This document shows, piece by piece, positions 31,137 to 64,000 of a DNA stretch of 64,000 nt. Every line of letters begins with the position of its first letter. Positions within the stretch are counted from its first letter, which is position 1. A program made the translations under genes and the position numbers. The DNA is taken from positions 62,001 through 126,000 of IMG/VR virus record IMGVR_UViG_3300041402_000314. The stretch is one strand, 5' to 3'. The notes under the pieces were generated by a model, which made no database searches, was not told where the DNA came from, and saw only the letters and a list, made by a program, of their open reading frames with translations.

Positions 31137-31558
31137 AAGAGAATAAATTTAGGGTATGGGATACTTTTACTAAAAAGATGGTCTTTGAAGGATTTAATGT
31201 CATAGGAGAAGTAACATGCTTTAATGGTATTGAACAATATGGAGATGAACATCCTAATCCTGCATATGAATCATCATTGATGCGACTTAATGATTTCATT
31301 CTCATGCAATTTACTGGTCTTGCGGATAAAAACGGTAAAGACTTATATGAAAATGACTTGGTAATACACAAACATGATTTATCCGTATATCAGGTGATCT
31401 GGGTAGATGAAGAAGCTAAATTCATACTCAATTTAGTAAAGGGAAATGGTAATGATAGTATTGATGAAGATTTAAGTCCGTTGAATCTATCGCTATTTAC
31501 GATTATAGGAAATATATATGAGAAACCTGAATGGTTGGAGATAGAAAATGAAAGGTAG
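31133..31558 (+). CDS. YopX-family protein
   Basis: KFRVWD, MQFTGLADKNGKDLYENDLV, IIGNIYE.PE. Confidence 0.9.
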   Translation: MKENKFRVWDTFTKKMVFEGFNVIGEVTCFNGIEQYGDEHPNPAYESSLMRLNDFILMQFTGLADKNGKDLYENDLVIHKHDLSVYQVIWVDEEAKFILNLVKGNGNDSIDEDLSPLNLSLFTIIGNIYEKPEWLEIENER

Positions 31559-43898: not shown

Positions 43899-44396
43899 TT
43901 AACGCCTCGGTTTCTTCTTCTTATTATATATCTCGATCTCAGTCAAAATTTTCCATTCCCATCCTCTTTTAACACAATAAGCTTTAGCCGCCTCCCATTT
44001 TGCAGAGTTAACAGCATACGTATAAGTCTCCCTTAATAACGTTTGAGTCCTCTTACCCCTTCTTCTAACAGGTGGTAAGGACTGAGCATATGGTTTCACC
44101 TCGATCAAATATTTCGACAATCTCCCCTGAGTATCCCTTATAATAGCGAAAAAATCTGGAAAATATCTAGCTGGTTTAGTCTGAACCACCTTGTCCTTAT
44201 TGAATTTTATCGGCTTATGATAGCCTATAATAATGGATTCTGAATTCCATTCCACCACATTTGGATTAGCATCAAAATACCTCATCACTTTTAATTCCCA
44301 CGAACTACGATACACAATAGGCCACGCACCTTTATATTTTGAAGGGTGTTTCGGTATATACGTTCCCTGACTATATTTAGATTTTCCTCTAGGCAT
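43899..44396 (-). CDS. gp4-like head completion nuclease (TnsA-like)
   Basis: YIPKHPSKYKG, YRSSWE, WNSE, RYFPDF, LIEVKP, VNSAKWEAA. Confidence 0.93.
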   Translation of the reverse strand: MPRGKSKYSQGTYIPKHPSKYKGAWPIVYRSSWELKVMRYFDANPNVVEWNSESIIIGYHKPIKFNKDKVVQTKPARYFPDFFAIIRDTQGRLSKYLIEVKPYAQSLPPVRRRGKRTQTLLRETYTYAVNSAKWEAAKAYCVKRGWEWKILTEIEIYNKKKKPRR

Positions 44397-46930: not shown

Positions 46931-47239
46931 ATGAGTGTTATCGATAAGATAGATAACCTTCTGAATGAAGCCTCTTCTAAGAAGCCTAAAGACATTAAAA
47001 GCATTTGGGATGCTGGTGAAGATGAAACGGATAGGTATACCATTGTCTTCGACCCTAAACAAGGTTATGAAGCTAATCCGGGTCTTTATATGATATTAGG
47101 ATTTGCTGCTGGTAGAGGCGGTGGTTCTATTTCTCAATGGGGAGAAGCCAAAGAAGGTAAACATTTAGGTAAAAAGCTTAAATGGGAAGATTTACCAAAA
47201 GAATCTCAAGAGCATGTTTTACAAAGGATTAAGGAATAA
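46931..47239 (+). CDS. Putative internal head protein (leader + conserved phage domain)
   Basis: Leader MSVIDKIDNLLNE; DRYTIVF...QWGE...HLGKK...DLP...Q. Confidence 0.6.
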   Translation: MSVIDKIDNLLNEASSKKPKDIKSIWDAGEDETDRYTIVFDPKQGYEANPGLYMILGFAAGRGGGSISQWGEAKEGKHLGKKLKWEDLPKESQEHVLQRIKE

Positions 47240-47250
47240 GGGAGACTAAG

Positions 47251-47928
47251 ATGAATCAACATCCATTAGTATTTTTAAGGGAAGAATTTGATTTTCAAAA
47301 CTTCGATAATATTATTGAAGAAGGTAAAGACGGTAAGGAAAAGACATATTGGGTTGTCGGTCCTACTATTGTATCTGAAGCAGAAAACAAGAATGGTAGA
47401 AAATACCAGAAGAGTGTCTGTGAAAGAGAAGTAGAAAGGTTCCAAAAAACAATAGATGAGAATAGGTCTGCTGGTGAACTTGGACATCCGAGTACACCAG
47501 AAATTAATCTCGAAAGAATATCTCATTACATCAAAGAGTTAAAGCAAGATGGAAATATTTGGATAGGTAAGCATCAAGTAGCTTCTACTCCAATGGGAAA
47601 CATCGCTAAAGCTCTCATTAATGATGGATATAAAATGGGTATTTCTACAAGAGGTCTTGGAACAGTTAAGGACGGAGTAGTAGGCGAGGATTTTAGATTG
47701 ATTACTGCCGACCTAGTTTCTGAGCCTTCTGGTCCCGGATGTTTTGTTGAATCTATTGTAGAAAATAAGCAATGGATTATAGACGAGTCTGGGAAAATCA
47801 AAGAAGTAGCGATGGAAGAAGCTTATGATGATCTTGAAGAAAAACTATGCGATTTGCCTAAACATGATATTGAAAAATTCATGATGGAAGCTATCTCATC
47901 ATTTGTTTCTAAAATTCAAAAAGCGTAA
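47251..47928 (+). CDS. gp21-like prohead protease
   Basis: NKNGRKY, GELGHP, INLERISH, TPMGNI, GISTRGLG, DLVSEPS. Confidence 0.95.
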   Translation: MNQHPLVFLREEFDFQNFDNIIEEGKDGKEKTYWVVGPTIVSEAENKNGRKYQKSVCEREVERFQKTIDENRSAGELGHPSTPEINLERISHYIKELKQDGNIWIGKHQVASTPMGNIAKALINDGYKMGISTRGLGTVKDGVVGEDFRLITADLVSEPSGPGCFVESIVENKQWIIDESGKIKEVAMEEAYDDLEEKLCDLPKHDIEKFMMEAISSFVSKIQKA

Positions 47929-47996: not shown

Positions 47997-48782
47997 ATGA
48001 ATCCACTAGAAAAATTAATCGAGTTTATTGAAAAAGAAGGAAAGGTTGAACTTTCTGAAGGTTTCAAATCTAAGCTTGAGGACGCTATCAAGGTAGCAAC
48101 TGTAGACAAGGAAACTGAGATTGAAGGTCTTAAGGAAATAATGAAGGAAGCTAAAGCTGAGATCGAATCTGGTAGAAGCGAACTTCAAGCTCTTAAGGAA
48201 GGCACTCTGGAAGATGCGAAGAAGGCTATAGAAGAGTATAAGGAATCTCTTACTGAGAAGATTTCTAGTTATCTTGAGTCTGAACTACAAAATCTCATTC
48301 CTGAGAATCTTGTAGAAGCTCAAGCTAAAGTAGAAGCTTATGAGCCTATCGTAGAAAAAGTTAAGGGCATATTCAAAGGTTATGGAGTTGAAATCGATTC
48401 TGAAGCTCATGATGTTCTTAAGGAAGCTAAAGAAGAAATTCTTGGACTCCAGAAAAGCTATGACACTATCGTAGCTGACAAACTTAAGCTTGAAGAGAAG
48501 ACTGCCGAGCTTCTTGCTAAGTATGTATTGAAGGAAAAGTGTGACGGTCTTACTGAAGCACAAGTCACTAAAATCAATGTTATCTTCAAAGGAAGTGATG
48601 TTGAAGAAATCGAAGAGAAATTTGAGTCTGTAGCTGATCTTATTATCTCTGATGGTTCTTCTGCTAGTGATGGTGATAGTGTTGATGGTGCTGGTTCTGG
48701 TTCTGATTTTATTGACGAATCTGCTGGTTCTGCTGCTATAATCGAAGAGGATGTTAACTCCCTCGGACAAGACCTTCTTTAA
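47997..48782 (+). CDS. gp22-like prohead scaffolding protein
   Basis: Acidic coiled coil, LSEGFK, KISSYL, GLTEAQ; between gp21 and gp23. Confidence 0.85.
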   Translation: MNPLEKLIEFIEKEGKVELSEGFKSKLEDAIKVATVDKETEIEGLKEIMKEAKAEIESGRSELQALKEGTLEDAKKAIEEYKESLTEKISSYLESELQNLIPENLVEAQAKVEAYEPIVEKVKGIFKGYGVEIDSEAHDVLKEAKEEILGLQKSYDTIVADKLKLEEKTAELLAKYVLKEKCDGLTEAQVTKINVIFKGSDVEEIEEKFESVADLIISDGSSASDGDSVDGAGSGSDFIDESAGSAAIIEEDVNSLGQDLL

Positions 48783-48859: not shown

Positions 48860-50002
48860 ATGATAACTGAAAATGTAGATCAATTAATTGAAAAATGGGA
48901 TGGAAAGGGTTTCAAGGTAAGCGAAATCTCTGACCAGCTAGTTAGAGAGAACACTGCAAAGATTCTCGAAAATGAGCATAGATATATACTAGAAGCGAGT
49001 TCTACTTTGTCAACAGACATAGCGGACTTCAAGAAGATCATCATGCCTCTTACGAGAAGAATCTTCCCGAATCTTATCGCTAATGATCTTGTAGGTGTAC
49101 AGCCTATGAGCGGTCCTGTTGGACTTGCATACGCACTTAGGTTCAAAGCTGGTAACGCTGAGACTAACTATAACAGTGGTACGCAACAGGAAGTAGGTTA
49201 TAACACTGTTGATAAAGACTACTCTGGTTCTGTTCTTACGTCTGCTGGTGAAAGATGGGGTTCTACTGACCCAACTAAGACCAAGGAAATTCCAGAAGCA
49301 CAAATGAGCATCGAGCAGGTTTCTATCGAAGCAAAGACCAGAAAGTTGAGAGCAAGGTACTCTCTCGAATCTGCACAAGACCTTAGAAACGTTCATGGTC
49401 TTAATGTAGAAGCTGAGATGACTAACATGCTTCAATACGAAATCTCTGCTGAAATTGATAGAGAGCTTGTAGACAGAATTAACACTCTTGCTGATACTAA
49501 CTCTTCCGACTATGTTGTTAGTGCTGGTGACGGTCAGTGGGAAGCTGAGAAGTTCAGAAATCTTTACACAAGAATCGTTAAAGAAGCATCCGCAATCGCT
49601 ACTAGAACTAGAAGAGGTGCTGGTAACTTCATCATATGTTCTTCTAACGTAGTAACTGCGCTTGACTCTCTTAACAACTTCTTGATTCAGCCAACAAGTT
49701 CTGGCCCAATGAATCTTTCTCCGGGTGTTGCAAAAGTAGGTAGCATCGAGAACAGATTCACCGTATACAGAGATACTTTCGCTACAAGCGACTATATCAC
49801 TGTAGGTTACAAAGGTCCGGGTGCTGCTAACAGCGGTGTTGTTTACTGTCCTTACGTACCGATCATGATCAGCAAAGCAACTGAAGAAGGTTCTTTCTAT
49901 CCGATCATCGGTGTTATGACGCGATATGGCGTAGTAGATCATCTTTTTGGCGGAAGCGATTTTTACAGCAAAATTAACGTTGATTTTACAAACGTTTTTT
50001 AA
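48860..50002 (+). CDS. gp23-like major capsid protein (compact, 380 aa)
   Basis: RRIFPNLIANDLVGVQPMSGPVGL, AKTRKLRA.YS.E.AQDL..VHG, EIDRE, TRRGAGNF, YCPYVP, MTRYG. Confidence 0.97.
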   Translation: MITENVDQLIEKWDGKGFKVSEISDQLVRENTAKILENEHRYILEASSTLSTDIADFKKIIMPLTRRIFPNLIANDLVGVQPMSGPVGLAYALRFKAGNAETNYNSGTQQEVGYNTVDKDYSGSVLTSAGERWGSTDPTKTKEIPEAQMSIEQVSIEAKTRKLRARYSLESAQDLRNVHGLNVEAEMTNMLQYEISAEIDRELVDRINTLADTNSSDYVVSAGDGQWEAEKFRNLYTRIVKEASAIATRTRRGAGNFIICSSNVVTALDSLNNFLIQPTSSGPMNLSPGVAKVGSIENRFTVYRDTFATSDYITVGYKGPGAANSGVVYCPYVPIMISKATEEGSFYPIIGVMTRYGVVDHLFGGSDFYSKINVDFTNVF

Positions 50003-50115: not shown

Positions 50116-50218
50116 TATATAAATAATTAAAAGAGAGTTAGCTAACTTACGGGAATAGGTTAGCAACAGGTGGAGTAAGTTACCTGATGTCCTCTCTCAC
50201 ATCTATTTATATAAGGAG
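50116..50218 (+). repeat. Structured cassette, copy 3 (leader of the GIY-YIG gene)
   Basis: TATAAATA..AGAGAG, GCTAAC/GTTAGC, CAGGT-GGAG-/ACCTG, TGTC-CTCTCT..TATTTATATAAGGAG; matches the reverse complement of copies 1 and 2. Confidence 0.85.
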
Positions 50219-50225
50219 TAAGATC

Positions 50226-51266
50226 ATGCCAAACCCACCATTCTATACTTACGTTCTATTAGACCCTCGTAAAAAAGGAAACTATATTTATAATGGATTC
50301 TCATTCGATTATGAGCCGTTCTATTTCGGTAAAGGAATTAACGGTAGATGTAATGACCATATCAGCGAAGCTATCAATACCGATAAAAATAGACCTAAAT
50401 TAAATAAAATAAGAAAAATTCTCAAAGTTGGGAGGAAACCTATTATAGTTAAAGTCTTAGAAAATATTGATGAGCAAACAGCATTTGATAATGAAATAGA
50501 ATCAATAGCCGAGATAGGTCGAGCTGATTTAGGTTTAGGTCCACTAACTAACCTAACTGATGGTGGAGAAGGTGTAAGTGGTAGAATTATGTCTGATGAA
50601 GAAAAGAAATTACGAAGTCAAATATTAACTGGTATCAAAAAACCGCCTAGAACAGATGAACATAATAAAAATTTAGGTAATGCTGTTAGTGAAGCATGGC
50701 AAAATAAATTAGAAGAAGGATTTGAGTGGTCTGATGAAACCATTAATAAAAGAGCTGAATCTAATAGAGGTCAAACTAGAACAGATGAACAGAAACAGAG
50801 AATGAGCGTGTCTCAAATAATTTATTGTTCGGATGAGAAAGTTCGTGAAATGAAATCAGAAATATCACTCGAATATTATTCTTCTGAGGAAGGCGAACAA
50901 ACCAAACAACAAATATCAGCTAATCTCGTTTCCTTCTATGATACTGAAGAGGGTCAAGCTCTTAAAGATCATCTTTCATCTATTAACACAGGAGAAAATA
51001 ATCCTTTATATGGAACTAAAAATTCAGTTGAAACCATAGAGAAACGTGCAGCTACTAGAAAGAAAAATGGTCATTGGCAGATAAGTGAAGAGGAATTGTT
51101 TGAATCCTTTTCTAATGGACAGAAGAAACGATTTTCTGACCCAGAAGAGAGACGAAAGCAGAGCGAACGATTAAAGGGTAGGCGTTGGTATAATAACGGT
51201 AAACAACAAGGCCAATACCATCCAGATAAACGGCCTGATGGATGGGAATTAGGTAGATTAAGATAA
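50226..51266 (+). CDS. GIY-YIG (LEM-3/ANKLE1-like) homing endonuclease with NUMOD3-like repeats
   Basis: FYTYVLLDPR, PFYFGKG..GR...H, E...I...GR, LTNLTDGGEG, NPLYG, WYNNG. Confidence 0.85.
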   Translation: MPNPPFYTYVLLDPRKKGNYIYNGFSFDYEPFYFGKGINGRCNDHISEAINTDKNRPKLNKIRKILKVGRKPIIVKVLENIDEQTAFDNEIESIAEIGRADLGLGPLTNLTDGGEGVSGRIMSDEEKKLRSQILTGIKKPPRTDEHNKNLGNAVSEAWQNKLEEGFEWSDETINKRAESNRGQTRTDEQKQRMSVSQIIYCSDEKVREMKSEISLEYYSSEEGEQTKQQISANLVSFYDTEEGQALKDHLSSINTGENNPLYGTKNSVETIEKRAATRKKNGHWQISEEELFESFSNGQKKRFSDPEERRKQSERLKGRRWYNNGKQQGQYHPDKRPDGWELGRLR

Positions 51267-58168: not shown

Positions 58169-58230
58169 AAAGCTCCTTATAATATTACAAAGTATAAATA
58201 ATTAAAACTATGTAATGTGTAAGGAGCTTT
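58169..58230 (+). promoter_or_regulatory. Late promoter in the loop of a long hairpin at the early/late boundary
   Basis: AAAGCTCCTTAT-AATATTACA / TGTAATGT-GTAAGGAGCTTT followed by a T run; TATAAATA 58193-58200. Confidence 0.75.
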
Positions 58231-58284: not shown

Positions 58285-58548
58285 ATGAATTTTAAAGAAT
58301 ATTTGGATGAAGCTAAAGAAGTTGGGTTAAAAACATTATATGCTAAAGCAGTCCCTACTAAGGATGATGTTATTCTGAAATTAGACCCTGTTGCTGCTAA
58401 GAAGAAAAGAGATATCGAAATATATTCAGACCCCGAAGGTAAAGAATTAAAAGCAACCTTTAGATGGGATAAATCTAATAAACCAAGGAAGAATACGAAG
58501 GTAATTACTCTCAATAGCTGGAAATGGAAATTAGAGTGGATTAAATAA
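58285..58548 (+). CDS. Putative internal head protein
   Basis: Leader MNFKEYLDE resembles the T4 capsid targeting sequence. Confidence 0.6.
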   Translation: MNFKEYLDEAKEVGLKTLYAKAVPTKDDVILKLDPVAAKKKRDIEIYSDPEGKELKATFRWDKSNKPRKNTKVITLNSWKWKLEWIK

Positions 58549-58563
58549 TTAAGGAATTAAACT

Positions 58564-59304
58564 ATGTCAATAAATGTAATAGACAGCAAGGCAGAGCTGA
58601 AGGATTGGATTAAACGTAAGCTAGGTTGGCCTACTATTAACCTAGAATTCCACGATGCCCAGCTAGAAGATAATATAGATGACGCTATAAAGGAATATAC
58701 TGAACATTCTGGTGATGCTACCTATAGATCAGCACTCCTTTTATGTATGTCTGCGGGTGTAACTGAATATCCATTGGATGATACCGTAGAGTCTGTATTA
58801 GGATTAGAAACGCAATCCGCTATTGGTGGTGGTATCAATACTCTATTCACTATCGAGAACCAATTATACCAAGCTGGTTATATCGACATATTTAGTGGTT
58901 CTATGAATCTAACAAGCTATCAGATAGCTATGGAATATCTCGATATGACTAACAGTATGTTAGCAGCTCAGTATTTCACCGAATTCAATAAATATACAAA
59001 TACTCTCACGATAACACCAACACCCGATGATGATTATACGGCTGTTTTGGAGATATATAGTAAGAGAGATTTCACTGGAGCCACTTCTACTGTCTATGAT
59101 GTCAAATGGGTTAAAGACTACTCTCTTGCTCTTTCTATGATTGTATTAGGGCGTATATGGGGTAAGTATGATGGTATGCCATTACCCGGTGGTGGTACTC
59201 TGAATGCTTCTGATATGAAAGCAGATGGCAGAGAAGATAAATTAGCTCTCGAAGAAAAACTTCAGGCAGATCACGGTGAACCATTAGAGCCATCATTCGG
59301 TTAA
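58564..59304 (+). CDS. gp13-like neck protein
   Basis: LKDWIKRKLGWPTINLE...QLEDNIDDA, WVKDY.LAL, G..WGKYDG..LPGG.TLN. Confidence 0.92.
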   Translation: MSINVIDSKAELKDWIKRKLGWPTINLEFHDAQLEDNIDDAIKEYTEHSGDATYRSALLLCMSAGVTEYPLDDTVESVLGLETQSAIGGGINTLFTIENQLYQAGYIDIFSGSMNLTSYQIAMEYLDMTNSMLAAQYFTEFNKYTNTLTITPTPDDDYTAVLEIYSKRDFTGATSTVYDVKWVKDYSLALSMIVLGRIWGKYDGMPLPGGGTLNASDMKADGREDKLALEEKLQADHGEPLEPSFG

Positions 59305-59363
59305 AGCTTGACAATAATATAAATATTTGATATGGTATTACCATAACTTAAAGGAGCATATAA

Positions 59364-59663
59364 ATGAAAGATTTACTAACGCAAGGAAATGACGTAGCTG
59401 ATTTCCTAATGAATCAGATCGATGAGGCCAGAGACGGTGTTACCTCTTCTCAAGCCAAAAGATTGAAAAGCGATTGGGAAAAAATAGCAAAAGAGGGTAT
59501 TGAAGTCGAAGAAATTAAAGGTACATTTTATGGATTCGGCTCTGAATTAGCTACTTTACGCCTATTAAAAAAATATACTGCTAACGGTCAAACTGCTAAT
59601 AAGAAAATCAAGGCAGATTATAGTAATGGAAGAAATTCACACTTCTTCAGATTAGAAACATAA
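59364..59663 (+). CDS. Putative internal head protein
   Basis: Leader MKDLLTQGNDVADFLMNQIDE. Confidence 0.55.
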   Translation: MKDLLTQGNDVADFLMNQIDEARDGVTSSQAKRLKSDWEKIAKEGIEVEEIKGTFYGFGSELATLRLLKKYTANGQTANKKIKADYSNGRNSHFFRLET

Positions 59664-59687
59664 TAAGAAAATTTAAGGAGAAACAAG

Positions 59688-59993
59688 ATGACAAAAAATG
59701 TATTAACACAAGGAAATGATGTAGAAAGGGAACTGATGAGTCAGATCAATGAAGAGGCAAACGGTCTGAGTTCAAAAGAGAAGAAAGAGATAATGGATAA
59801 TATCAGGAAAAATATGAATTTCTATCTTCAGAAACTCGAAAACAATTTAGATAAGTTCCCTACTAGTTGGGGCGAGAATGAAGCATATGCTCTTTTCGGC
59901 AATACGATAAGAAGTATTATGGAGACTGGTGTTCTTAAGAAAGCTTTAAAGGACATGAAGAAAAATAATAAATGGTATTCATTGAGCATATAA
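59688..59993 (+). CDS. Putative internal head protein
   Basis: Leader MTKNVLTQGNDVERELMSQINEE. Confidence 0.55.
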   Translation: MTKNVLTQGNDVERELMSQINEEANGLSSKEKKEIMDNIRKNMNFYLQKLENNLDKFPTSWGENEAYALFGNTIRSIMETGVLKKALKDMKKNNKWYSLSI

Positions 59994-60004
59994 GGGAGCA
60001 GAAA

Positions 60005-60409
60005 ATGAAAAAATTAATGGAACAACTAGACCTCGTATTAGAGGGTATATCCAAGAATGTTCTCAGACAATATCTAGCAACCGCTCTATGGTCTTCTAAT
60101 GATGATGAGGGCGACCCATTGGATAGTGAATATGATGTAAGAGATATAGCTAAGTCTTCTATCAATCAAGCTAAAAAGGATTTGGCTAAATTCTGGAAGC
60201 AAGCAGGTGATCTTCTGAAAGGCGAAGATGAGACTCAGGCAGCACATGATTTATGGTTGACTAGAAATCATCATGGAGCTGGTTTCTGGGATAGAAAATA
60301 TAATAATGACGAGGATGGTACTAAAGGCGATAAGCTAACTAAGATAGCAGAAAAATTTGGTGAAATAAATCCTGTTGTCGGTGATGACGGTAAAATATAT
60401 TTCGAATAA
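60005..60409 (+). CDS. Putative internal head protein (leader + conserved phage domain)
   Basis: Leader MKKLMEQLDLVLE; YLATALWSS...HDLWLTRNHHGAGFWDR. Confidence 0.6.
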   Translation: MKKLMEQLDLVLEGISKNVLRQYLATALWSSNDDEGDPLDSEYDVRDIAKSSINQAKKDLAKFWKQAGDLLKGEDETQAAHDLWLTRNHHGAGFWDRKYNNDEDGTKGDKLTKIAEKFGEINPVVGDDGKIYFE

Positions 60410-60418
60410 GGAGATAAG

Positions 60419-61003
60419 ATGTCCAAAAGATTATTAGAACAATTAGATAGCGTACTGATCACAGAAGATCAGATCGTAGAGAAGTTCGAGCTATCCAATG
60501 ACGCAATAGCACTTCTTGAAATAGCAACATTCATGGAGACCAAGACCTTAGATGAAGCTCTTAATTTCGGGAAGCTTTTAGGTAAGTTCGGATTGAAAGC
60601 CCATAAAGGAACTGGACTTCTGGATGTACTAAAGAAGGCAGGTAAGAACATCGCTAAAATGATGTGGCTTGCTTTCCAAGCTCAGAGAGGAGATGATTCT
60701 GCTAAACTGGAATTGAAAGACCTTCTTAATACTAAGATCAAGAAAGAAGAAGTTATTAACTTCCTTTATATGCTCGATCAGGCAACCCTACATCTAGTTA
60801 CTGGTCCTCTTCACACGATTGAAGCTCTAACTGGTTGGCATATAAGCGCAGACCTTCATAAAGCTACTTCAGCAACCCAAGCTATTAAGACTGCTATAAA
60901 GGAACTTGAGGATGCTGGTAAGAAATTGGTTGGTAGCGTTAAGACTAAAGTTCTTTCTTATGTCGGAAACATTAAATCTGTTATGGGTTTGGCTAACGGA
61001 TAA
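60419..61003 (+). CDS. Putative internal head protein
   Basis: Leader MSKRLLEQLDSVLITE; further L/IxE sites. Confidence 0.55.
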   Translation: MSKRLLEQLDSVLITEDQIVEKFELSNDAIALLEIATFMETKTLDEALNFGKLLGKFGLKAHKGTGLLDVLKKAGKNIAKMMWLAFQAQRGDDSAKLELKDLLNTKIKKEEVINFLYMLDQATLHLVTGPLHTIEALTGWHISADLHKATSATQAIKTAIKELEDAGKKLVGSVKTKVLSYVGNIKSVMGLANG

Positions 61004-61014
61004 AGGGTAATTAA

Positions 61015-61529
61015 ATGAGTAAGACATTTAGCGAGTATATCAAAGAAGGAAAGATTAGCGCATGGCAAAAACTTTATAGACAGGCCATAGTAGATTTTTT
61101 CTTTAGAAAATATGGGCTAAAGGCAACTATAAAATATAAGCCCATAAAAAGTAAAAAATTCTTTGGAGATGTTGTTTTGAATAACGATTCTCTCAAGAAA
61201 CATATTTTTACTCTTCGATATAATCCTGATTCTGGTTTCGAATATATGGCTTCGTCTATATTACATGAATTGACACATGTAAAACAAATCATTAAAAAAC
61301 ATCTTTCGGCAAATGATAAAGGAACTATAATTTTGTGGAAAGGAAAGAAACCATTCTAGTCAATGATTATAAAAATATAAAATATGATGCATACAAACAA
61401 TTACCTTGGGAAGTAGAAGCCATAAAGTTAAGTAAATCTTTACCCGAAGAATTCTATAAAAGTCCAGAATATTTAGCATTACAGGGAAAGGATAAATCAT
61501 TAGATTATATCATAGATTTATATAAATAA
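61015..61529 (+). pseudogene. HExxH metallopeptidase-like internal protein split by a -1 frameshift
   Basis: Leader MSKTFSEYIKE and LHELTHVKQ in the first frame; Y..LPWEVEA in the -1 frame; junction GGAAAGAAA at ~61345. Confidence 0.65.
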
Positions 61530-61602
61530 TTGAAAGATTAAGATTGACAACAAGAATTAGATATGATAAGCTATTATCATAATCTAAATAAGGGAGAGAA
61601 CG

Positions 61603-62100
61603 ATGAATAAAACATTTAAAGAATATCTGAAAGAAGGTAAGGCTAGTTTCGATAGCCCTGAAGATATGGCAACCCAGATCGAGAAGATGATTAAAGGTTA
61701 TTTCCCTAAGTCATGGGCAAATGTAAAAGCCGTATCGAATCTGGGTAAATCAATCAACATTACATTTACACTAGGGTCTGATAAAAGTGAATGGGCAAAT
61801 GGGATATTCCAAAATGACCCTGCCATTACGTCTATTATGATTCATCGTCCTAGTAATGCTGAAAATTTTATGGATGAAAAAATGCAAGCTGAAGGTCTTC
61901 AAACTTCACTTACTATCAGTCCTACTAAACAATATATGGCTTATGGTAGTTTAAAGACAGGATGGAGAAAAAAGACTGGAAATCCAGAAGTTATTTTTAA
62001 GCATGTCGAAAACCATTTCAAAAAATTGAAATCAACTATAAAAGACAATCTGGATATCATGACACCAGAACATAGAAAAATAGCGGAGAAGAAGGTATGA
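61603..62100 (+). CDS. Putative internal head protein
   Basis: Leader MNKTFKEYLKE. Confidence 0.6.
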   Translation: MNKTFKEYLKEGKASFDSPEDMATQIEKMIKGYFPKSWANVKAVSNLGKSINITFTLGSDKSEWANGIFQNDPAITSIMIHRPSNAENFMDEKMQAEGLQTSLTISPTKQYMAYGSLKTGWRKKTGNPEVIFKHVENHFKKLKSTIKDNLDIMTPEHRKIAEKKV

Positions 62101-62297
62101 GTAACGAAATATTAAATAAAATAGCTGGTGTCTTAGAAGAAGGCAAAGTAGTAAAATTGAGTAGTGATGGTGATATCAGTGTTAAAAAGGCTATAGCGAA
62201 TCATATCACTATCAGAGATGATAGTGTCGGAGCCATAATTTCTATCAATAAAAAATATCTAAAAGATTTGGTAGATTTCATTCAAAAGGAATTTTAA
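62097..62297 (+). CDS. Putative internal head protein
   Basis: Leader MSNEILNKIAGVLEE. Confidence 0.5.
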   Translation: MSNEILNKIAGVLEEGKVVKLSSDGDISVKKAIANHITIRDDSVGAIISINKKYLKDLVDFIQKEF

Positions 62298-62504
62298 AGG
62301 AGATTGAAAAGGTGTATGATACCAAAGTAACATTGAAGAAAGTCGAAGAAGGTTATTATCATGGTTACTATGAAGGAAAGCAGATTCTAGGCGGTAAAAA
62401 GAGTGAACTAGTTAGAATGATGAAACTGATGGTTCAGGGTATAATGGAATCCGAGAGAAAGAAGCTGACTTGACAAACCATATCAATATGTAGTATAATA
62501 GAGA

Positions 62505-62605
62505 CAACTTGGACAGAAAAAACTGTTATGACACACTAAAATATAGATAATCTTGATCTGAAATATGGTTGGTAAGCCTAGACGCTGTTAAGTCTAGGCT
62601 TTTTT
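62505..62605 (+). ncRNA. Putative ~100-nt small RNA
   Basis: TTGACA 62470 / TATAAT 62494 promoter, no credible ORF, terminator AAGCCTAGAC/GTCTAGGCTT followed by a T run. Confidence 0.5.
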
Positions 62606-62657
62606 ATTTTCAGGATATATAAATAATTATAATAAACCTGTAATAAAGGAAACCACT

Positions 62658-62903
62658 ATGAGCTTTAAGGATAAGATTATTAAGTATATCTGGAATAATC
62701 TATTAGCATTTGATAGACAAGTTAATGCTCTTCTATGCGGAGACCCAGAGGAAACTATCAGTTCTCGTATGGGTAAATTAGTTGAGCAAGATAGATGTCC
62801 TTTCTGTTATTTTATCTGTACACATTTTCTACACAAATTAGACCCAGATCATTGCCAGAAGTCAATTGACAGAGACGAAGGCGATGATGAAATAAAATTT
62901 TAG
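62658..62903 (+). CDS. Conserved small phage protein (late)
   Basis: L.AFDRQVNALL.GDPEETISSRMG...DPDHC; TATAAATA upstream. Confidence 0.75.
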   Translation: MSFKDKIIKYIWNNLLAFDRQVNALLCGDPEETISSRMGKLVEQDRCPFCYFICTHFLHKLDPDHCQKSIDRDEGDDEIKF

Positions 62904-62913
62904 GAGAATAAAT

Positions 62914-63519
62914 ATGTCAAGTTTCAAAGATTACATGACCAAAGAAAAGAATAATGATATCATCAATGATGGACATTTCCATGTAGAAAAGATGGGAGGT
63001 AGAACAGGTCCACCTATTAGAGTTAAGACCGATGATGGCAGAACAACCCATATCCATAATCAAAGTGATGGTAAGGATACAGTCGAAGCTAAAGATGTAG
63101 GTGGTTTCGTTAATAGGGATGATATAGAAGACAATGTAACTTCTCTTCCAAAAAGCCCAAATCATACCCATATGCAAACTGATGGACAGCATACCTCACC
63201 AGCTATATATCCTGAAGTAGAAGAAGATCAGAAGGGTATTAGTATCGGTGGTATCTCTGAGAAGATAGAACAAGTTCTTGAGGGTAAGGGTAAATTCGAT
63301 AAGAAAAATCTAAAAGGTAAAAATACCAAGATAATAGACCCTCATAACAAAGATAAGATTTGGTATTTTGATGATATACAGGATAATAAGATTAGAGTGA
63401 CACAAGTAGTTTTAGGTAGCATTACAGGTCAAAGTGTTATGTCACTTAAAGATGTGAATGAATTACTTAAAGGATTAGGCAAACAAAGTTTCGGTACTTT
63501 AGGATTTAGGGAGAATTAA
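62914..63519 (+). CDS. Putative internal head protein with His-rich region and a second internal leader
   Basis: MSSFKDYM; DGHFH, THIH, NHTH; internal ISEKIEQVLEGK. Confidence 0.55.
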   Translation: MSSFKDYMTKEKNNDIINDGHFHVEKMGGRTGPPIRVKTDDGRTTHIHNQSDGKDTVEAKDVGGFVNRDDIEDNVTSLPKSPNHTHMQTDGQHTSPAIYPEVEEDQKGISIGGISEKIEQVLEGKGKFDKKNLKGKNTKIIDPHNKDKIWYFDDIQDNKIRVTQVVLGSITGQSVMSLKDVNELLKGLGKQSFGTLGFREN

Positions 63520-63522
63520 ATA

Positions 63523-63857
63523 ATGGATTTAATAGAGAAGATAGAACAAGTATTAATTGAAGGTAAGATCAAAAAGTTTAAGGGTGATAATCCTTTTTCA
63601 AAATCAAATCTATATATGGTTGGAGCTGGTATGGATACGAATGGAAATCATGTGGTATCGATAAAATTTCCTAATTCCAGCGCATTTACAATTCAAACCG
63701 CTGGTAATTTGAACACCGCTCATGATGCATTGAGAGGGGTGAAAGATTATGAGACCGAAATAGATGATTCCACAAAAAGAAGATAGAAAAAGAGATTGTT
63801 GAATATGTCAAGGATTATGGGTCTAAGGCACAACAATCAAAACTAAAAACATATTAA
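63523..63857 (+). CDS. Putative internal head protein, apparent -1 frameshift near 63777
   Basis: Leader MDLIEKIEQVLIE; the -1 frame continues KKIEKEIVEYVKDYG...TY to a stop just before the next RBS. Confidence 0.5.
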
Positions 63858-63868
63858 AGGGGAATCAA

Positions 63869-64000
63869 ATGAAAATCATAGACAGGATAGACAATATTTT
63901 AAATGAAGCATCTAAAGAAATAGATGAGACTTCTGGTACTGAATTGGAAATGTATATAGAGAATGATAGCCAATTATATAGTCAACAATTTATTCCTATA
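63869..64000 (+). CDS. Putative internal head protein (truncated by the window edge)
   Basis: MKIIDRIDNILNEASK...ELEMYIENDSQLY. Confidence 0.6.
   Translation, partial: MKIIDRIDNILNEASKEIDETSGTELEMYIENDSQLYSQQFIPI

What the first reader, a model, noticed from the sequence alone, without database searches (positions are those of the whole stretch)
58285..64000. Array of ~12 small cargo proteins with three classes of capsid-targeting-like leaders
Seen: unrelated ORFs share N-terminal leaders, most ending in (L/I)xE. Class 1: F(K/S)(E/D)Y (58285, 61015, 61603, 62914). Class 2: LTQGNDV...M.QI.E (59364, 59688). Class 3: (I/L)(D/E/N)(K/Q/R)(I/L)xx(V/I/L)LxE (60005, 60419, 62097, 63523, 63869, and 46931 in the head operon). 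Known: T4 internal proteins carry a ~10-aa targeting sequence (MKTYQEFIAE-like) removed by gp21 at (L/I)xE; they are injected with the DNA, and IPI* blocks GmrSD. Inference: an expanded modular leader-plus-payload system delivering varied effectors (a HExxH peptidase, a His-rich protein, a TRNHHGAGFWDR domain) at infection. These are strong anti-defence candidates, and classes 2 and 3 may be undescribed targeting signals.
Basis: partly seen in the sequence, partly recalled or inferred. Interest (0 to 1): 0.72.

Follow-up and report, generated by a model that had tools for sequence, protein, structure and literature searches.

The report
Expanded capsid-cargo gene array, T4-like phage
An uncultured T4-like phage from marine sediment carries about 25 small, unrelated genes that all begin with one of three short interchangeable "address tags" resembling the tag phage T4 uses to load proteins into its head for injection, which makes them a large predicted set of injected proteins of unknown function.

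Summary
The window lies in a 204-kb virus genome with a T4-type head module, including a Peptidase_S77 (gp21-type) protease. From 58285 an array of small late genes flanks the gp13 neck gene. It runs past the window end to window-equivalent ~67299, just before a virion gene and gp14. About 21 array genes, one head-operon gene (46931) and three dispersed genes start with a short leader ending in (L/I)-x-Glu.

Class 1 matches the T4 capsid-targeting sequence of IPI/IPII/IPIII. Class 3 (M-D-I-I-E-K-I-D-x-x-L-x-E) keeps hydrophobic residues at the positions mapped in T4 for targeting and cleavage. Class 2 is a longer leader.

Payloads are mutually unrelated, mostly small and basic. Several have leaderless homologues in unrelated phages. 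In metagenomic relatives, five orthologous payloads carry class 1 in one phage and class 3 in another, with the junction at the predicted cleavage Glu.

The best reading is an enlarged, modular T4-type internal-protein system with alternative leaders. Packaging, cleavage, injection and anti-defence roles are inferred, not shown. No payload function was identified. It is a new variant of a known kind.

The parts
46931..47239 (+). Small protein in the gp68 position, between portal and protease, with a class-3 leader (MSVIDKIDNLLNE|A)
   Evidence: Orthologues in relatives are 70-89% identical. They carry either a class-3 or a class-1 leader, joined at invariant Glu13.
47251..47928 (+). gp21-type prohead protease, the presumed leader-cleaving enzyme
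   Evidence: PHROG 207 at 2e-54. Pfam Peptidase_S77 at 5e-20. The ELGHP and GISTRGLG motifs align with T4 gp21 ELNHP and GVSSRGLG.
47997..48782 (+). gp22-type scaffold. It holds 17 (L/I)xE sites, and its N-terminus resembles a class-3 leader.
48860..50002 (+). gp23-type major capsid protein with a predicted propeptide cleavage at YILE|ASS after residue 45
   Evidence: The site is conserved as xxE|ASSTL in relatives. The T4 equivalent is LTE|AEIGG.
58193..58200 (+). T4-type late promoter motif TATAAATA ahead of the array. Further copies lie at 59318, 61521 and 62618.
   Evidence: There are 26 copies in the window against 12.8 expected. The same motif precedes the gp2, portal, scaffold and capsid genes.
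58285..58548 (+). Class-1 cargo, 87 aa, leader MNFKEYLDE|A, mature pI 9.9
58564..59304 (+). gp13 neck protein. It is not cargo and serves as the landmark for the array.
   Evidence: homologues carry PF26809 Phage_T4_gp13.
59364..59663 (+). Class-2 cargo, 99 aa, with a leader of about 21 aa ending QIDE|A
   Evidence: The payload matches PHROG 26253 from residue 30. The homologue in Sinorhizobium phage phiM12 (73 aa) is leaderless.
59688..59993 (+). Class-2 cargo, 101 aa, with the same leader on an unrelated payload
   Evidence: Class-2 leaders sit on two further payloads in relatives.
60005..60409 (+). Class-3-like cargo, 134 aa, carrying the widespread HD(F/L)WLTRNxHGAGFWD domain
   Evidence: Searches show more than 1700 homologues, most 112-120 aa and leaderless. 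In the AF2 model (pLDDT 92) the leader is a separate helix at residues 2-13. There is no PDB fold match.
60419..61003 (+). Class-3-like cargo, 194 aa, leader ending LITE|D
   Evidence: A homologue at 37% identity in another viral contig carries a class-1 leader.
61015..61529 (+). Class-1 cargo with an HExxH motif. It is split into two overlapping frames, 61015-61359 and 61335-61529.
   Evidence: The two ORFs match consecutive parts of PHROGs 10499 and 16532. There is no Pfam hit.
61603..62100 (+). Class-1 cargo, 165 aa, leader MNKTFKEYLKE|G
62097..62297 (+). Class-3-like cargo, 66 aa
62312..62903 (+). Two array genes without a leader: 62312-62473 and the Cys-rich 62658-62903 (PHROG 3342)
   Evidence: Both are conserved in relatives.
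62914..63519 (+). Class-1 cargo, 201 aa, His-rich, with an internal class-3-like leader near residues 113-125. It looks like two fused cassettes.
   Evidence: Seventeen nt are identical to the leader DNA of the next gene. The orthologue in a relative is only 121 aa.
63523..63786 (+). Class-3 cargo, 87 aa. Its orthologue in a relative has a class-1 leader.
63869..64000 (+). Start of a class-3 cargo gene that ends at window-equivalent 64255. Ten more leader genes follow, up to 67299.
   Evidence: genome C1:125869-129299, locus L001.

Best explanation
The array encodes T4-type internal head proteins.

Proposed mechanism:
1. Each gene is transcribed late, together with the head genes.
2. Its product carries a 9-22-residue amphipathic N-terminal propeptide. 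This propeptide docks the protein onto the scaffolding core of the assembling prohead.
3. The gp21-type protease removes the propeptide after the Glu of an (L/I/M/V)-x-E motif.
4. The mature protein, mostly 5-20 kDa and basic, stays in the head with the DNA and enters the host at infection.

Class 1 is the direct counterpart of the T4 capsid-targeting sequence. Class 3 is an aliphatic version, one helical turn longer, that works interchangeably with class 1. Class 2 is a longer leader of the same logic.

The locus between gp13 and gp14 is a hyperplastic region. There, payload domains acquired from the general phage gene pool are equipped with a leader, swapped, fused and lost.

Shown here:
- the leaders, their enrichment and their peptide-level conservation;
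- the protease and its sites in the capsid and scaffold proteins;
- the late-promoter motifs;
- the leader swaps and the leaderless homologues.

Inferred, not shown: physical packaging, cleavage, injection and any anti-defence activity.
For: 1. T4 IPII and IPIII begin MKTYQEFIAE|A and IPI begins MKTFKEF. Class 1 here is M(x)KTF(K/S)EY(L/I)xE|(A/G).

2. In T4, targeting maps to leader residues 4 and 7 and processing to residues 8 and 10 (PMC9026906). The corresponding positions P7, P4, P3 and P1 are as follows:
- class 1: F (P7), Y (P4), L/I (P3), E (P1);
- class 3: I (P7), mostly aliphatic (P4), L (P3), E (P1).

3. A Peptidase_S77 protease with conserved motifs is present. So are a capsid propeptide site ILE|A and a scaffold with 17 sites.

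4. Five payload families carry class 1 in one phage and class 3 in another, joined at the Glu:
- 46931;
- 63523, 65945-equivalent and 60419;
- 64264-equivalent.

5. Leaderless homologues exist for the payloads of 60005, of 64264-equivalent and of 59364.

6. Payloads are unrelated to each other. Mature forms are mostly small and basic. They have (L/I)xE sites at 1.06 per 100 aa against 6.5 in the scaffold, so they should survive the protease.

7. TATAAATA motifs precede the array blocks just as they precede the head genes.

8. Arrays with the same leaders flank gp13 in relatives whose gp13 is 89%, 71% and 46% identical. T4 and a cyanophage have gp13 and gp14 adjacent.
Against: - There is no proteomic or experimental evidence. 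The phage is an uncultured metagenomic genome from marine sediment.
- No payload resembles T4 IPI-III or any known anti-defence protein.
- Class 3 lacks the aromatic residues of the T4 leader.
- Some leaders end in T-E or have unusual P1' residues (K, N, D).
- The structure-based docking of a leader to the protease gave no answer.
- Several payloads are acidic (60005, 64264-equivalent), unlike the classical IPs.
Confidence: 0.72

Rival explanations
1. The leader-bearing proteins are accessory prohead-core or scaffold components, that is, expanded gp67/gp68-like structural helpers. They would be degraded and expelled during maturation and would not be delivered to the host.
For: 46931 sits in the gp68 position of the head operon. 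The class-3 leader resembles the scaffold's own N-terminus. All genes look late.
Against: - The payloads are heterogeneous and highly variable between close relatives.
- Several payloads are domains found leaderless in siphoviruses and other unrelated phages.
- Their internal cleavage-site density is about 1 per 100 aa against 6.5 in the scaffold. Twelve of 25 have no internal site.
Confidence: 0.12
2. The shared N-terminal helix serves another purpose. It might act as a cytoplasmic interaction, oligomerisation or degradation tag, or as a pro-sequence for activation by the protease without packaging.
For: Only sequence evidence is available. Short amphipathic helices are common interaction modules. 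The AF2 model shows the leader as a detached helix.
Against: - Class 1 has a specific likeness to the experimentally defined T4 targeting sequence.
- The leaders end obligatorily in the protease motif.
- The genes lie within the head and neck late operons.
- Class 1 and class 3 are exchangeable.
Confidence: 0.1
3. The conservation is at the nucleic-acid level. It would be a shared translation-initiation region or a recombination cassette, and the peptide similarity would be a by-product.
For: All genes have very similar AAGGAG ribosome-binding sites. One pair shares 17 identical nt in the leader. Regulatory cassettes flanking T-even IP loci are described in the literature (PMC2839356).
Against: Leader codons differ freely at synonymous positions while the amino acids are kept. 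The upstream DNA is not conserved beyond the ribosome-binding site. Class swaps preserve only the peptide logic.
Confidence: 0.03

Closest known systems
Phage T4 internal proteins IPI, IPII, IPIII (and Alt) with their capsid-targeting sequence, processed by gp21
   Same: - Class 1 is a near-copy of the leader (K-T-F/Y-x-E-F/Y-I/L-x-E).
- Cleavage follows the (L/I)xE|A/G logic.
- A Peptidase_S77 protease is present.
- Mature proteins are small, mostly basic and mutually unrelated.
- The genes are non-core and highly variable between relatives.

   Different: - There are about 25 leader genes in one genome. T4 has three IPs plus Alt (PMC12373910).
- They are gathered in one late array of about 9 kb inserted around gp13, instead of two small loci elsewhere.
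- Two additional leader classes are present.
- The payloads are not homologous to T4 IPs.
- Only late-promoter motifs were looked for. T4 IPs are also made early (PMC6071114).
Hypervariable IP loci of T-even coliphages (Repoila et al. 1994; Comeau et al. 2007, as cited in PMC2839356 and PMC12373910)
   Same: Different payloads sit behind one conserved leader. Genes turn over between close relatives. More than 30 IP variants are known across phages.
   Different: - Here the diversity sits within single genomes of a deep-branching marine lineage. Its capsid protein is at most 36-39% identical to any GenBank phage.
- Leader classes themselves are exchanged on the same payload.
- Cassettes are sometimes fused into two-payload proteins.
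Ejection and inner-body proteins of giant phages (phiKZ, SPN3US) processed by a gp21-like protease
   Same: Many different head-internal proteins carry propeptides that a homologous prohead protease removes after Glu (PMC5694885).
   Different: Giant-phage propeptides are often longer than 100 residues, and the proteins are large. Here the leaders are 9-22 residues and the payloads small, as in T4.

Membership tests
T4-type capsid-targeted internal proteins (CTS system) | The phage encodes a gp21-type (Peptidase_S77) prohead protease with intact catalytic motifs. | tested here: met
   PHROG 207 and Pfam PF03420. The His and Ser motifs align with T4 gp21.
T4-type capsid-targeted internal proteins (CTS system) | A short N-terminal propeptide of about 10-20 aa ends in (L/I)-x-Glu. 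| tested here: met
   P1 is E in all 23 curated leaders. P3 is L or I in 13 of 16 class-3 leaders and 5 of 7 class-1 leaders. P1' is A or G in about half.
T4-type capsid-targeted internal proteins (CTS system) | The leader is similar to the T4 CTS, including the residues mapped for targeting (4, 7) and processing (8, 10). | tested here: met
   This holds for class 1 (mapping from PMC9026906). For class 3 the same positions are mostly aliphatic (strongly so at P7 and P3, more variable at P4) instead of aromatic, and for class 2 only part of the pattern is kept. For those two classes the feature is inconclusive.
T4-type capsid-targeted internal proteins (CTS system) | The same leader sits on mutually unrelated payloads, and payloads exist without the leader elsewhere. 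| tested here: met
   Leader-class swaps on orthologues are shown.
T4-type capsid-targeted internal proteins (CTS system) | The genes are expressed when proheads assemble (late transcription). | tested here: inconclusive
   TATAAATA motifs lie ahead of the array blocks and of the head genes and are enriched 2-fold. No transcript data exist.
T4-type capsid-targeted internal proteins (CTS system) | The proteins are present in virions with the leader removed, and are injected with the DNA. | not testable with these tools
   The phage is an uncultured metagenomic genome. The predicted protease-leader complex gave no answer.
T4 IPI/IPII/IPIII protein families (payload homology) | The mature part is homologous to a T4 internal protein. 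| tested here: not met
   There are no PHROG or Pfam matches to internal virion proteins.
Known anti-defence proteins (e.g. ArdA/Ocr-type DNA mimics) | Sequence or fold similarity to a characterised inhibitor. | tested here: not met
   - Pfam and PADLOC gave no hits.
- Profiles against PDB sequences gave no hits.
- Foldseek against the PDB gave no significant match for the two modelled payloads.
- There is only a very weak ArdA lead from the Atlas.

The most novel reading that the evidence does not exclude
The three leader classes may not be redundant. They could address cargo to different docking sites, copy numbers or release orders in the prohead core. This would give a T4-like phage a programmable multi-channel delivery system for about 25 proteins.

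That system would include two-payload polyproteins cut apart in the head. It would also include a charge-compensated, strongly acidic protein that might mimic DNA.
Probability: 0.2. Interest if true: 0.85.

Novelty: new variant of a known kind. Interest (0 to 1): 0.68.

Why it matters
Injected head proteins act before any phage gene is expressed. In T4 all three are specific inhibitors of GmrSD-type restriction enzymes (PMC12373910).

A lineage that equips about 25 unrelated domains per genome with packaging tags offers a sequence-readable catalogue of first-minute effectors. Several of these domains belong to very large uncharacterised phage families.

The natural class-1/class-3 swaps define a second functional targeting peptide. 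They also mark the exact fusion point. This is useful for understanding how the prohead core recognises cargo, which is still unresolved in T4. It is also useful for engineering protein delivery by phage heads.

Tried and rejected
- DNA-level searches of the array against GenBank phages found nothing in either near or distant mode.
- Single-protein scans of IMG/VR with gp13 found nothing. The same scan with the protease gave one distant contig without these leaders.
- A degenerate DNA pattern for the class-3 leader found only 8 stretches in IMG/VR, mostly single genes beside head or neck genes.
- Pfam, PHROGs and PADLOC gave no function for any payload.
- ESM Atlas look-alikes were unnamed viral clusters.
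- AF2 models of the 60005 payload and of the acidic domain of the 64264-equivalent protein are confident. Neither has a PDB fold match. The AFDB matches are uncharacterised homologues that align only after the leader.
- An ArdA-like reading of the acidic domain was considered and is not supported.
- tblastn of the HExxH protein against phages found nothing.
- The predicted complex of the protease with the first 40 residues of 63523 returned 'no answer' and is not used as evidence.
- Depletion of internal cleavage sites in payloads relative to shuffles was tested and not found: 25 observed against 25.3 expected.
- Chance, and simple paralogy of whole genes, were rejected.


Full report
**Context**

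The window is bases 62001-126000 of a single 204,149-bp virus record. The only public run that holds it is a marine sediment metagenome.

It is a T4-like myovirus genome, but a distant one.
- The head module reads gp2, portal, a gp67-like 56-aa ORF, a 102-aa protein (46931), the Peptidase_S77 protease, the scaffold and the gp23 capsid protein, followed by a GIY-YIG homing endonuclease.
- The capsid protein is at most 36-39% identical to any GenBank phage, and gp13 is below 30%.
- Nothing in GenBank phages matches the array at the DNA level.

**The observation**

Each gene has an AAGGAG-type ribosome-binding site.

The span also contains the gp13 neck gene (58564-59304) and two leaderless genes (62312, 62658).

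The array does not end at the window edge. Reading on in the genome (locus L001) gives eleven more leader genes, counting the one that starts at 63869. They run up to window-equivalent 67299. A 408-aa virion protein follows, then gp14 (70197-70781) and gp15.

In T4 and in cyanophage P-SSM4, gp13, gp14 and gp15 are contiguous. The array is therefore an insertion of about 8 kb into the neck operon, plus one gene upstream of gp13.

Three more leader genes are dispersed in the genome, two of them directly behind TATAAATA. The total is about 25.

**Chance and paralogy**

- The class-3 core occurs 10 times at N-termini against 0.08 expected. The class-1 core occurs 6 times against 0.19 expected. The reversed-genome control gives 1/0/0.
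- With the first 14 residues removed, no pair of array proteins is significantly similar.
- Leader codons vary at synonymous sites. Selection therefore acts on the peptide, and the similarity is not due to recent DNA duplication.
- One exception exists. A stretch inside 62914 (residues ~113-125) shares 17 identical nucleotides with the leader of the next gene.

**Comparison with T4, from T4's own sequence**

| Protein | N-terminus |
|---|---|
| IPII, IPIII | MKTYQEFIAE\|A |
| IPI | MKTFKEF..ITE\|A |
| Alt | MELITELFDE |
| gp24 | MAKINELLRE\|S |
| gp23 (cut site) | LTE\|A |

Class 1 here, M(x)KTF(K/S)EY(L/I)xE|(A/G), is the same signal.

The review PMC9026906 reports that targeting depends on leader residues 4 and 7 and processing on residues 8 and 10. 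Anchored on the Glu, these are P7, P4, P3 and P1. The residues at those positions are as follows:
- Class 1: F, Y, L/I, E.
- Class 3: I, mostly aliphatic (variable), L, E.

Class 3 therefore keeps the functional pattern and adds one N-terminal helical turn (M-D-I-I-E-K).

The protease has the T4 gp21 His and Ser motifs. The capsid protein has a matching propeptide site, YILE|ASS, which is conserved in relatives as xxE|ASSTL. The scaffold has 17 (L/I)xE sites.

**The strongest evidence: relatives**

Protein searches found metagenomic relatives of 46931 and of gp13 at 46-89% identity, some on long contigs. Their loci were fetched.

All of them carry arrays of small genes with the same leaders around gp13: about 17, 16 and 8 leader genes in the three loci. 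Gene content differs between them.

Five payload families carry different leader classes in different phages, with the join exactly at the predicted cleavage Glu:

| Payload | Leader here | Leader in relatives |
|---|---|---|
| 46931 | class 3 | MTFKDYVTE, MTTFKEYLTE or MNFSEYLIE (Glu13 invariant) |
| 63523 | class 3 | class 1 |
| 65945-equivalent | class 1 | class 3 |
| 60419 | class-3-like | class 1, in a 37%-identical homologue |
| 64264-equivalent | class 3 | MRFNEYLNE in a 49%-identical homologue |

These are natural swap experiments. They indicate that classes 1 and 3 are functionally equivalent modules.

Class 2 is shared by two unrelated payloads here and by two other payloads in relatives.

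**Leaders as add-ons to independent domains**

- The 60005 payload (HD-F/L-WLTRN-x-HGAGFWD) belongs to a family of more than 1700 proteins, including proteins of mycobacteriophages, Gordonia, Caulobacter and rV5-like phages. Most members are 112-120 aa and start directly at the domain. Only close relatives of this phage carry a leader, of class 3 or a class-1-like form.
- Its AF2 model (pLDDT 92) shows the leader as a separate helix (2-13) before the fold. All AFDB matches start at residue 17-18.
- The C-terminal domain of the 64264-equivalent protein belongs to a family of about 1300 proteins that are mostly 130-150 aa and stand alone.
- The class-2 payload 59364 has a leaderless 73-aa homologue in Sinorhizobium phage phiM12 and its kin.

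**Properties of the predicted mature proteins**

- Most are 5-20 kDa with pI 8-10, like the T4 IPs (PMC6071114).
- Internal (L/I)xE density is 1.06 per 100 aa, against 1.47 genome-wide and 6.5 in the scaffold. Twelve of 25 have none. They should survive maturation rather than be degraded like core proteins. The density is not lower than composition predicts.

Two architectures stand out.
- 62914 looks like two cassettes fused, with an internal leader-like cleavable linker. A database homologue likewise fuses the domains of two genes that are adjacent here.
- The 64264-equivalent protein is tripartite. After the leader comes a Lys-rich spacer (26 basic, 1 acidic), then an L-T-E|S site that the nearest orthologues keep in similar form. 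An acidic domain follows (11 basic, 53 acidic). A charge-compensating or DNA-mimic role is speculation. Its fold has no PDB match and no ArdA signal.

**Expression**

The T4 late-promoter motif TATAAATA is enriched in the window: 26 copies against 12.8 expected, and no shuffle out of 100 reached 26. It lies directly upstream of the gp2, portal, gp67-like, scaffold and capsid genes. It also lies at 58193, 59318, 61521 and 62618, and at 67371-equivalent. This fits co-expression with the head genes. No transcript data were available.

**Relation to what is known**

The principle is established. T-even phages have hypervariable loci of internal-protein genes that share only the targeting sequence, and more than 30 variants are known across phages (PMC3012670; PMC2839356; PMC12373910). 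T4 Ip1-3 each inhibit a specific GmrSD enzyme.

The new points here are:
- the scale within one genome;
- the location as a late array in the neck operon;
- the additional leader classes, with direct comparative evidence of interchangeability;
- cassette fusion;
- the deep-branching uncultured lineage.

I found no description of the class-2 or class-3 leaders in the searched literature. That search does not cover subscription journals.

**Limits**

Packaging, cleavage and injection are inferred. No payload function was identified. The peptidase label for 61015 rests only on an HExxH motif in a frameshifted gene. The complex prediction gave no answer.

**Verdict**

This is a new variant of a known kind.

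Noticed in passing
window 61015-61529: The HExxH gene is split. ORFs 61015-61359 and 61335-61529 lie in different frames. They match consecutive parts of the same PHROGs (10499, 16532). Whether this is an assembly error, a pseudogene or a programmed shift is undecided.
   Followed up: partly
window 62914-63519: This protein has a class-1 leader, a His-rich part and then an internal class-3-like leader near residues 113-125. Seventeen nt there are identical to the leader DNA of the next gene (63523). It looks like a fusion of two cargo cassettes. The orthologue in a close relative is only 121 aa.
   Followed up: partly
L001:8264-8992 (window-equivalent 64264-64992): A tripartite cargo. After the class-3 leader comes a Lys-rich spacer (26 basic, 1 acidic). 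An LTE|S site follows, then a strongly acidic domain (11 basic, 53 acidic). That domain belongs to a family of about 1300 stand-alone phage proteins. The confident model has no PDB match.
   Followed up: yes
L027:7415-8119 and L028:6557-7060 (relatives): A Zeta_toxin/AAA_33-type P-loop kinase carries a class-1 leader in two relatives. This suggests a packaged kinase. It is absent from this genome by tblastn.
   Followed up: partly
window 47997-48782: The scaffold N-terminus (MNPLEKLIEFIE) resembles the class-3 leader. This hints that class 3 may derive from, or dock like, the scaffold's own N-terminal helix.
   Followed up: no
window 43899-44396 (-) and 50187-51266 (+): Mobile endonuclease genes sit inside the head module. 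One is a TnsA-like endonuclease beside gp2. The other is a GIY-YIG/NUMOD3 homing endonuclease just after the capsid gene. Relatives differ in their presence.
   Followed up: partly
L016 (IMGVR_UViG_3300035698_012206, G004:C1:26899-27648): The gp13 homologue of this viral contig is interrupted by four in-frame TGA codons. This may be a sign of stop-codon recoding in that phage.
   Followed up: no
G000:C1:29969-30223 (-), 31197-31502 (-), 49368-49670 (-), outside the window: Three further leader-bearing small genes lie far from the array: class 3, class 1 and class 3. Two of them sit immediately behind a TATAAATA motif.
   Followed up: partly
window 48860-50002: The gp23-type capsid protein is short (380 aa against 521 in T4). 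Its predicted propeptide is only about 45 residues.
   Followed up: no
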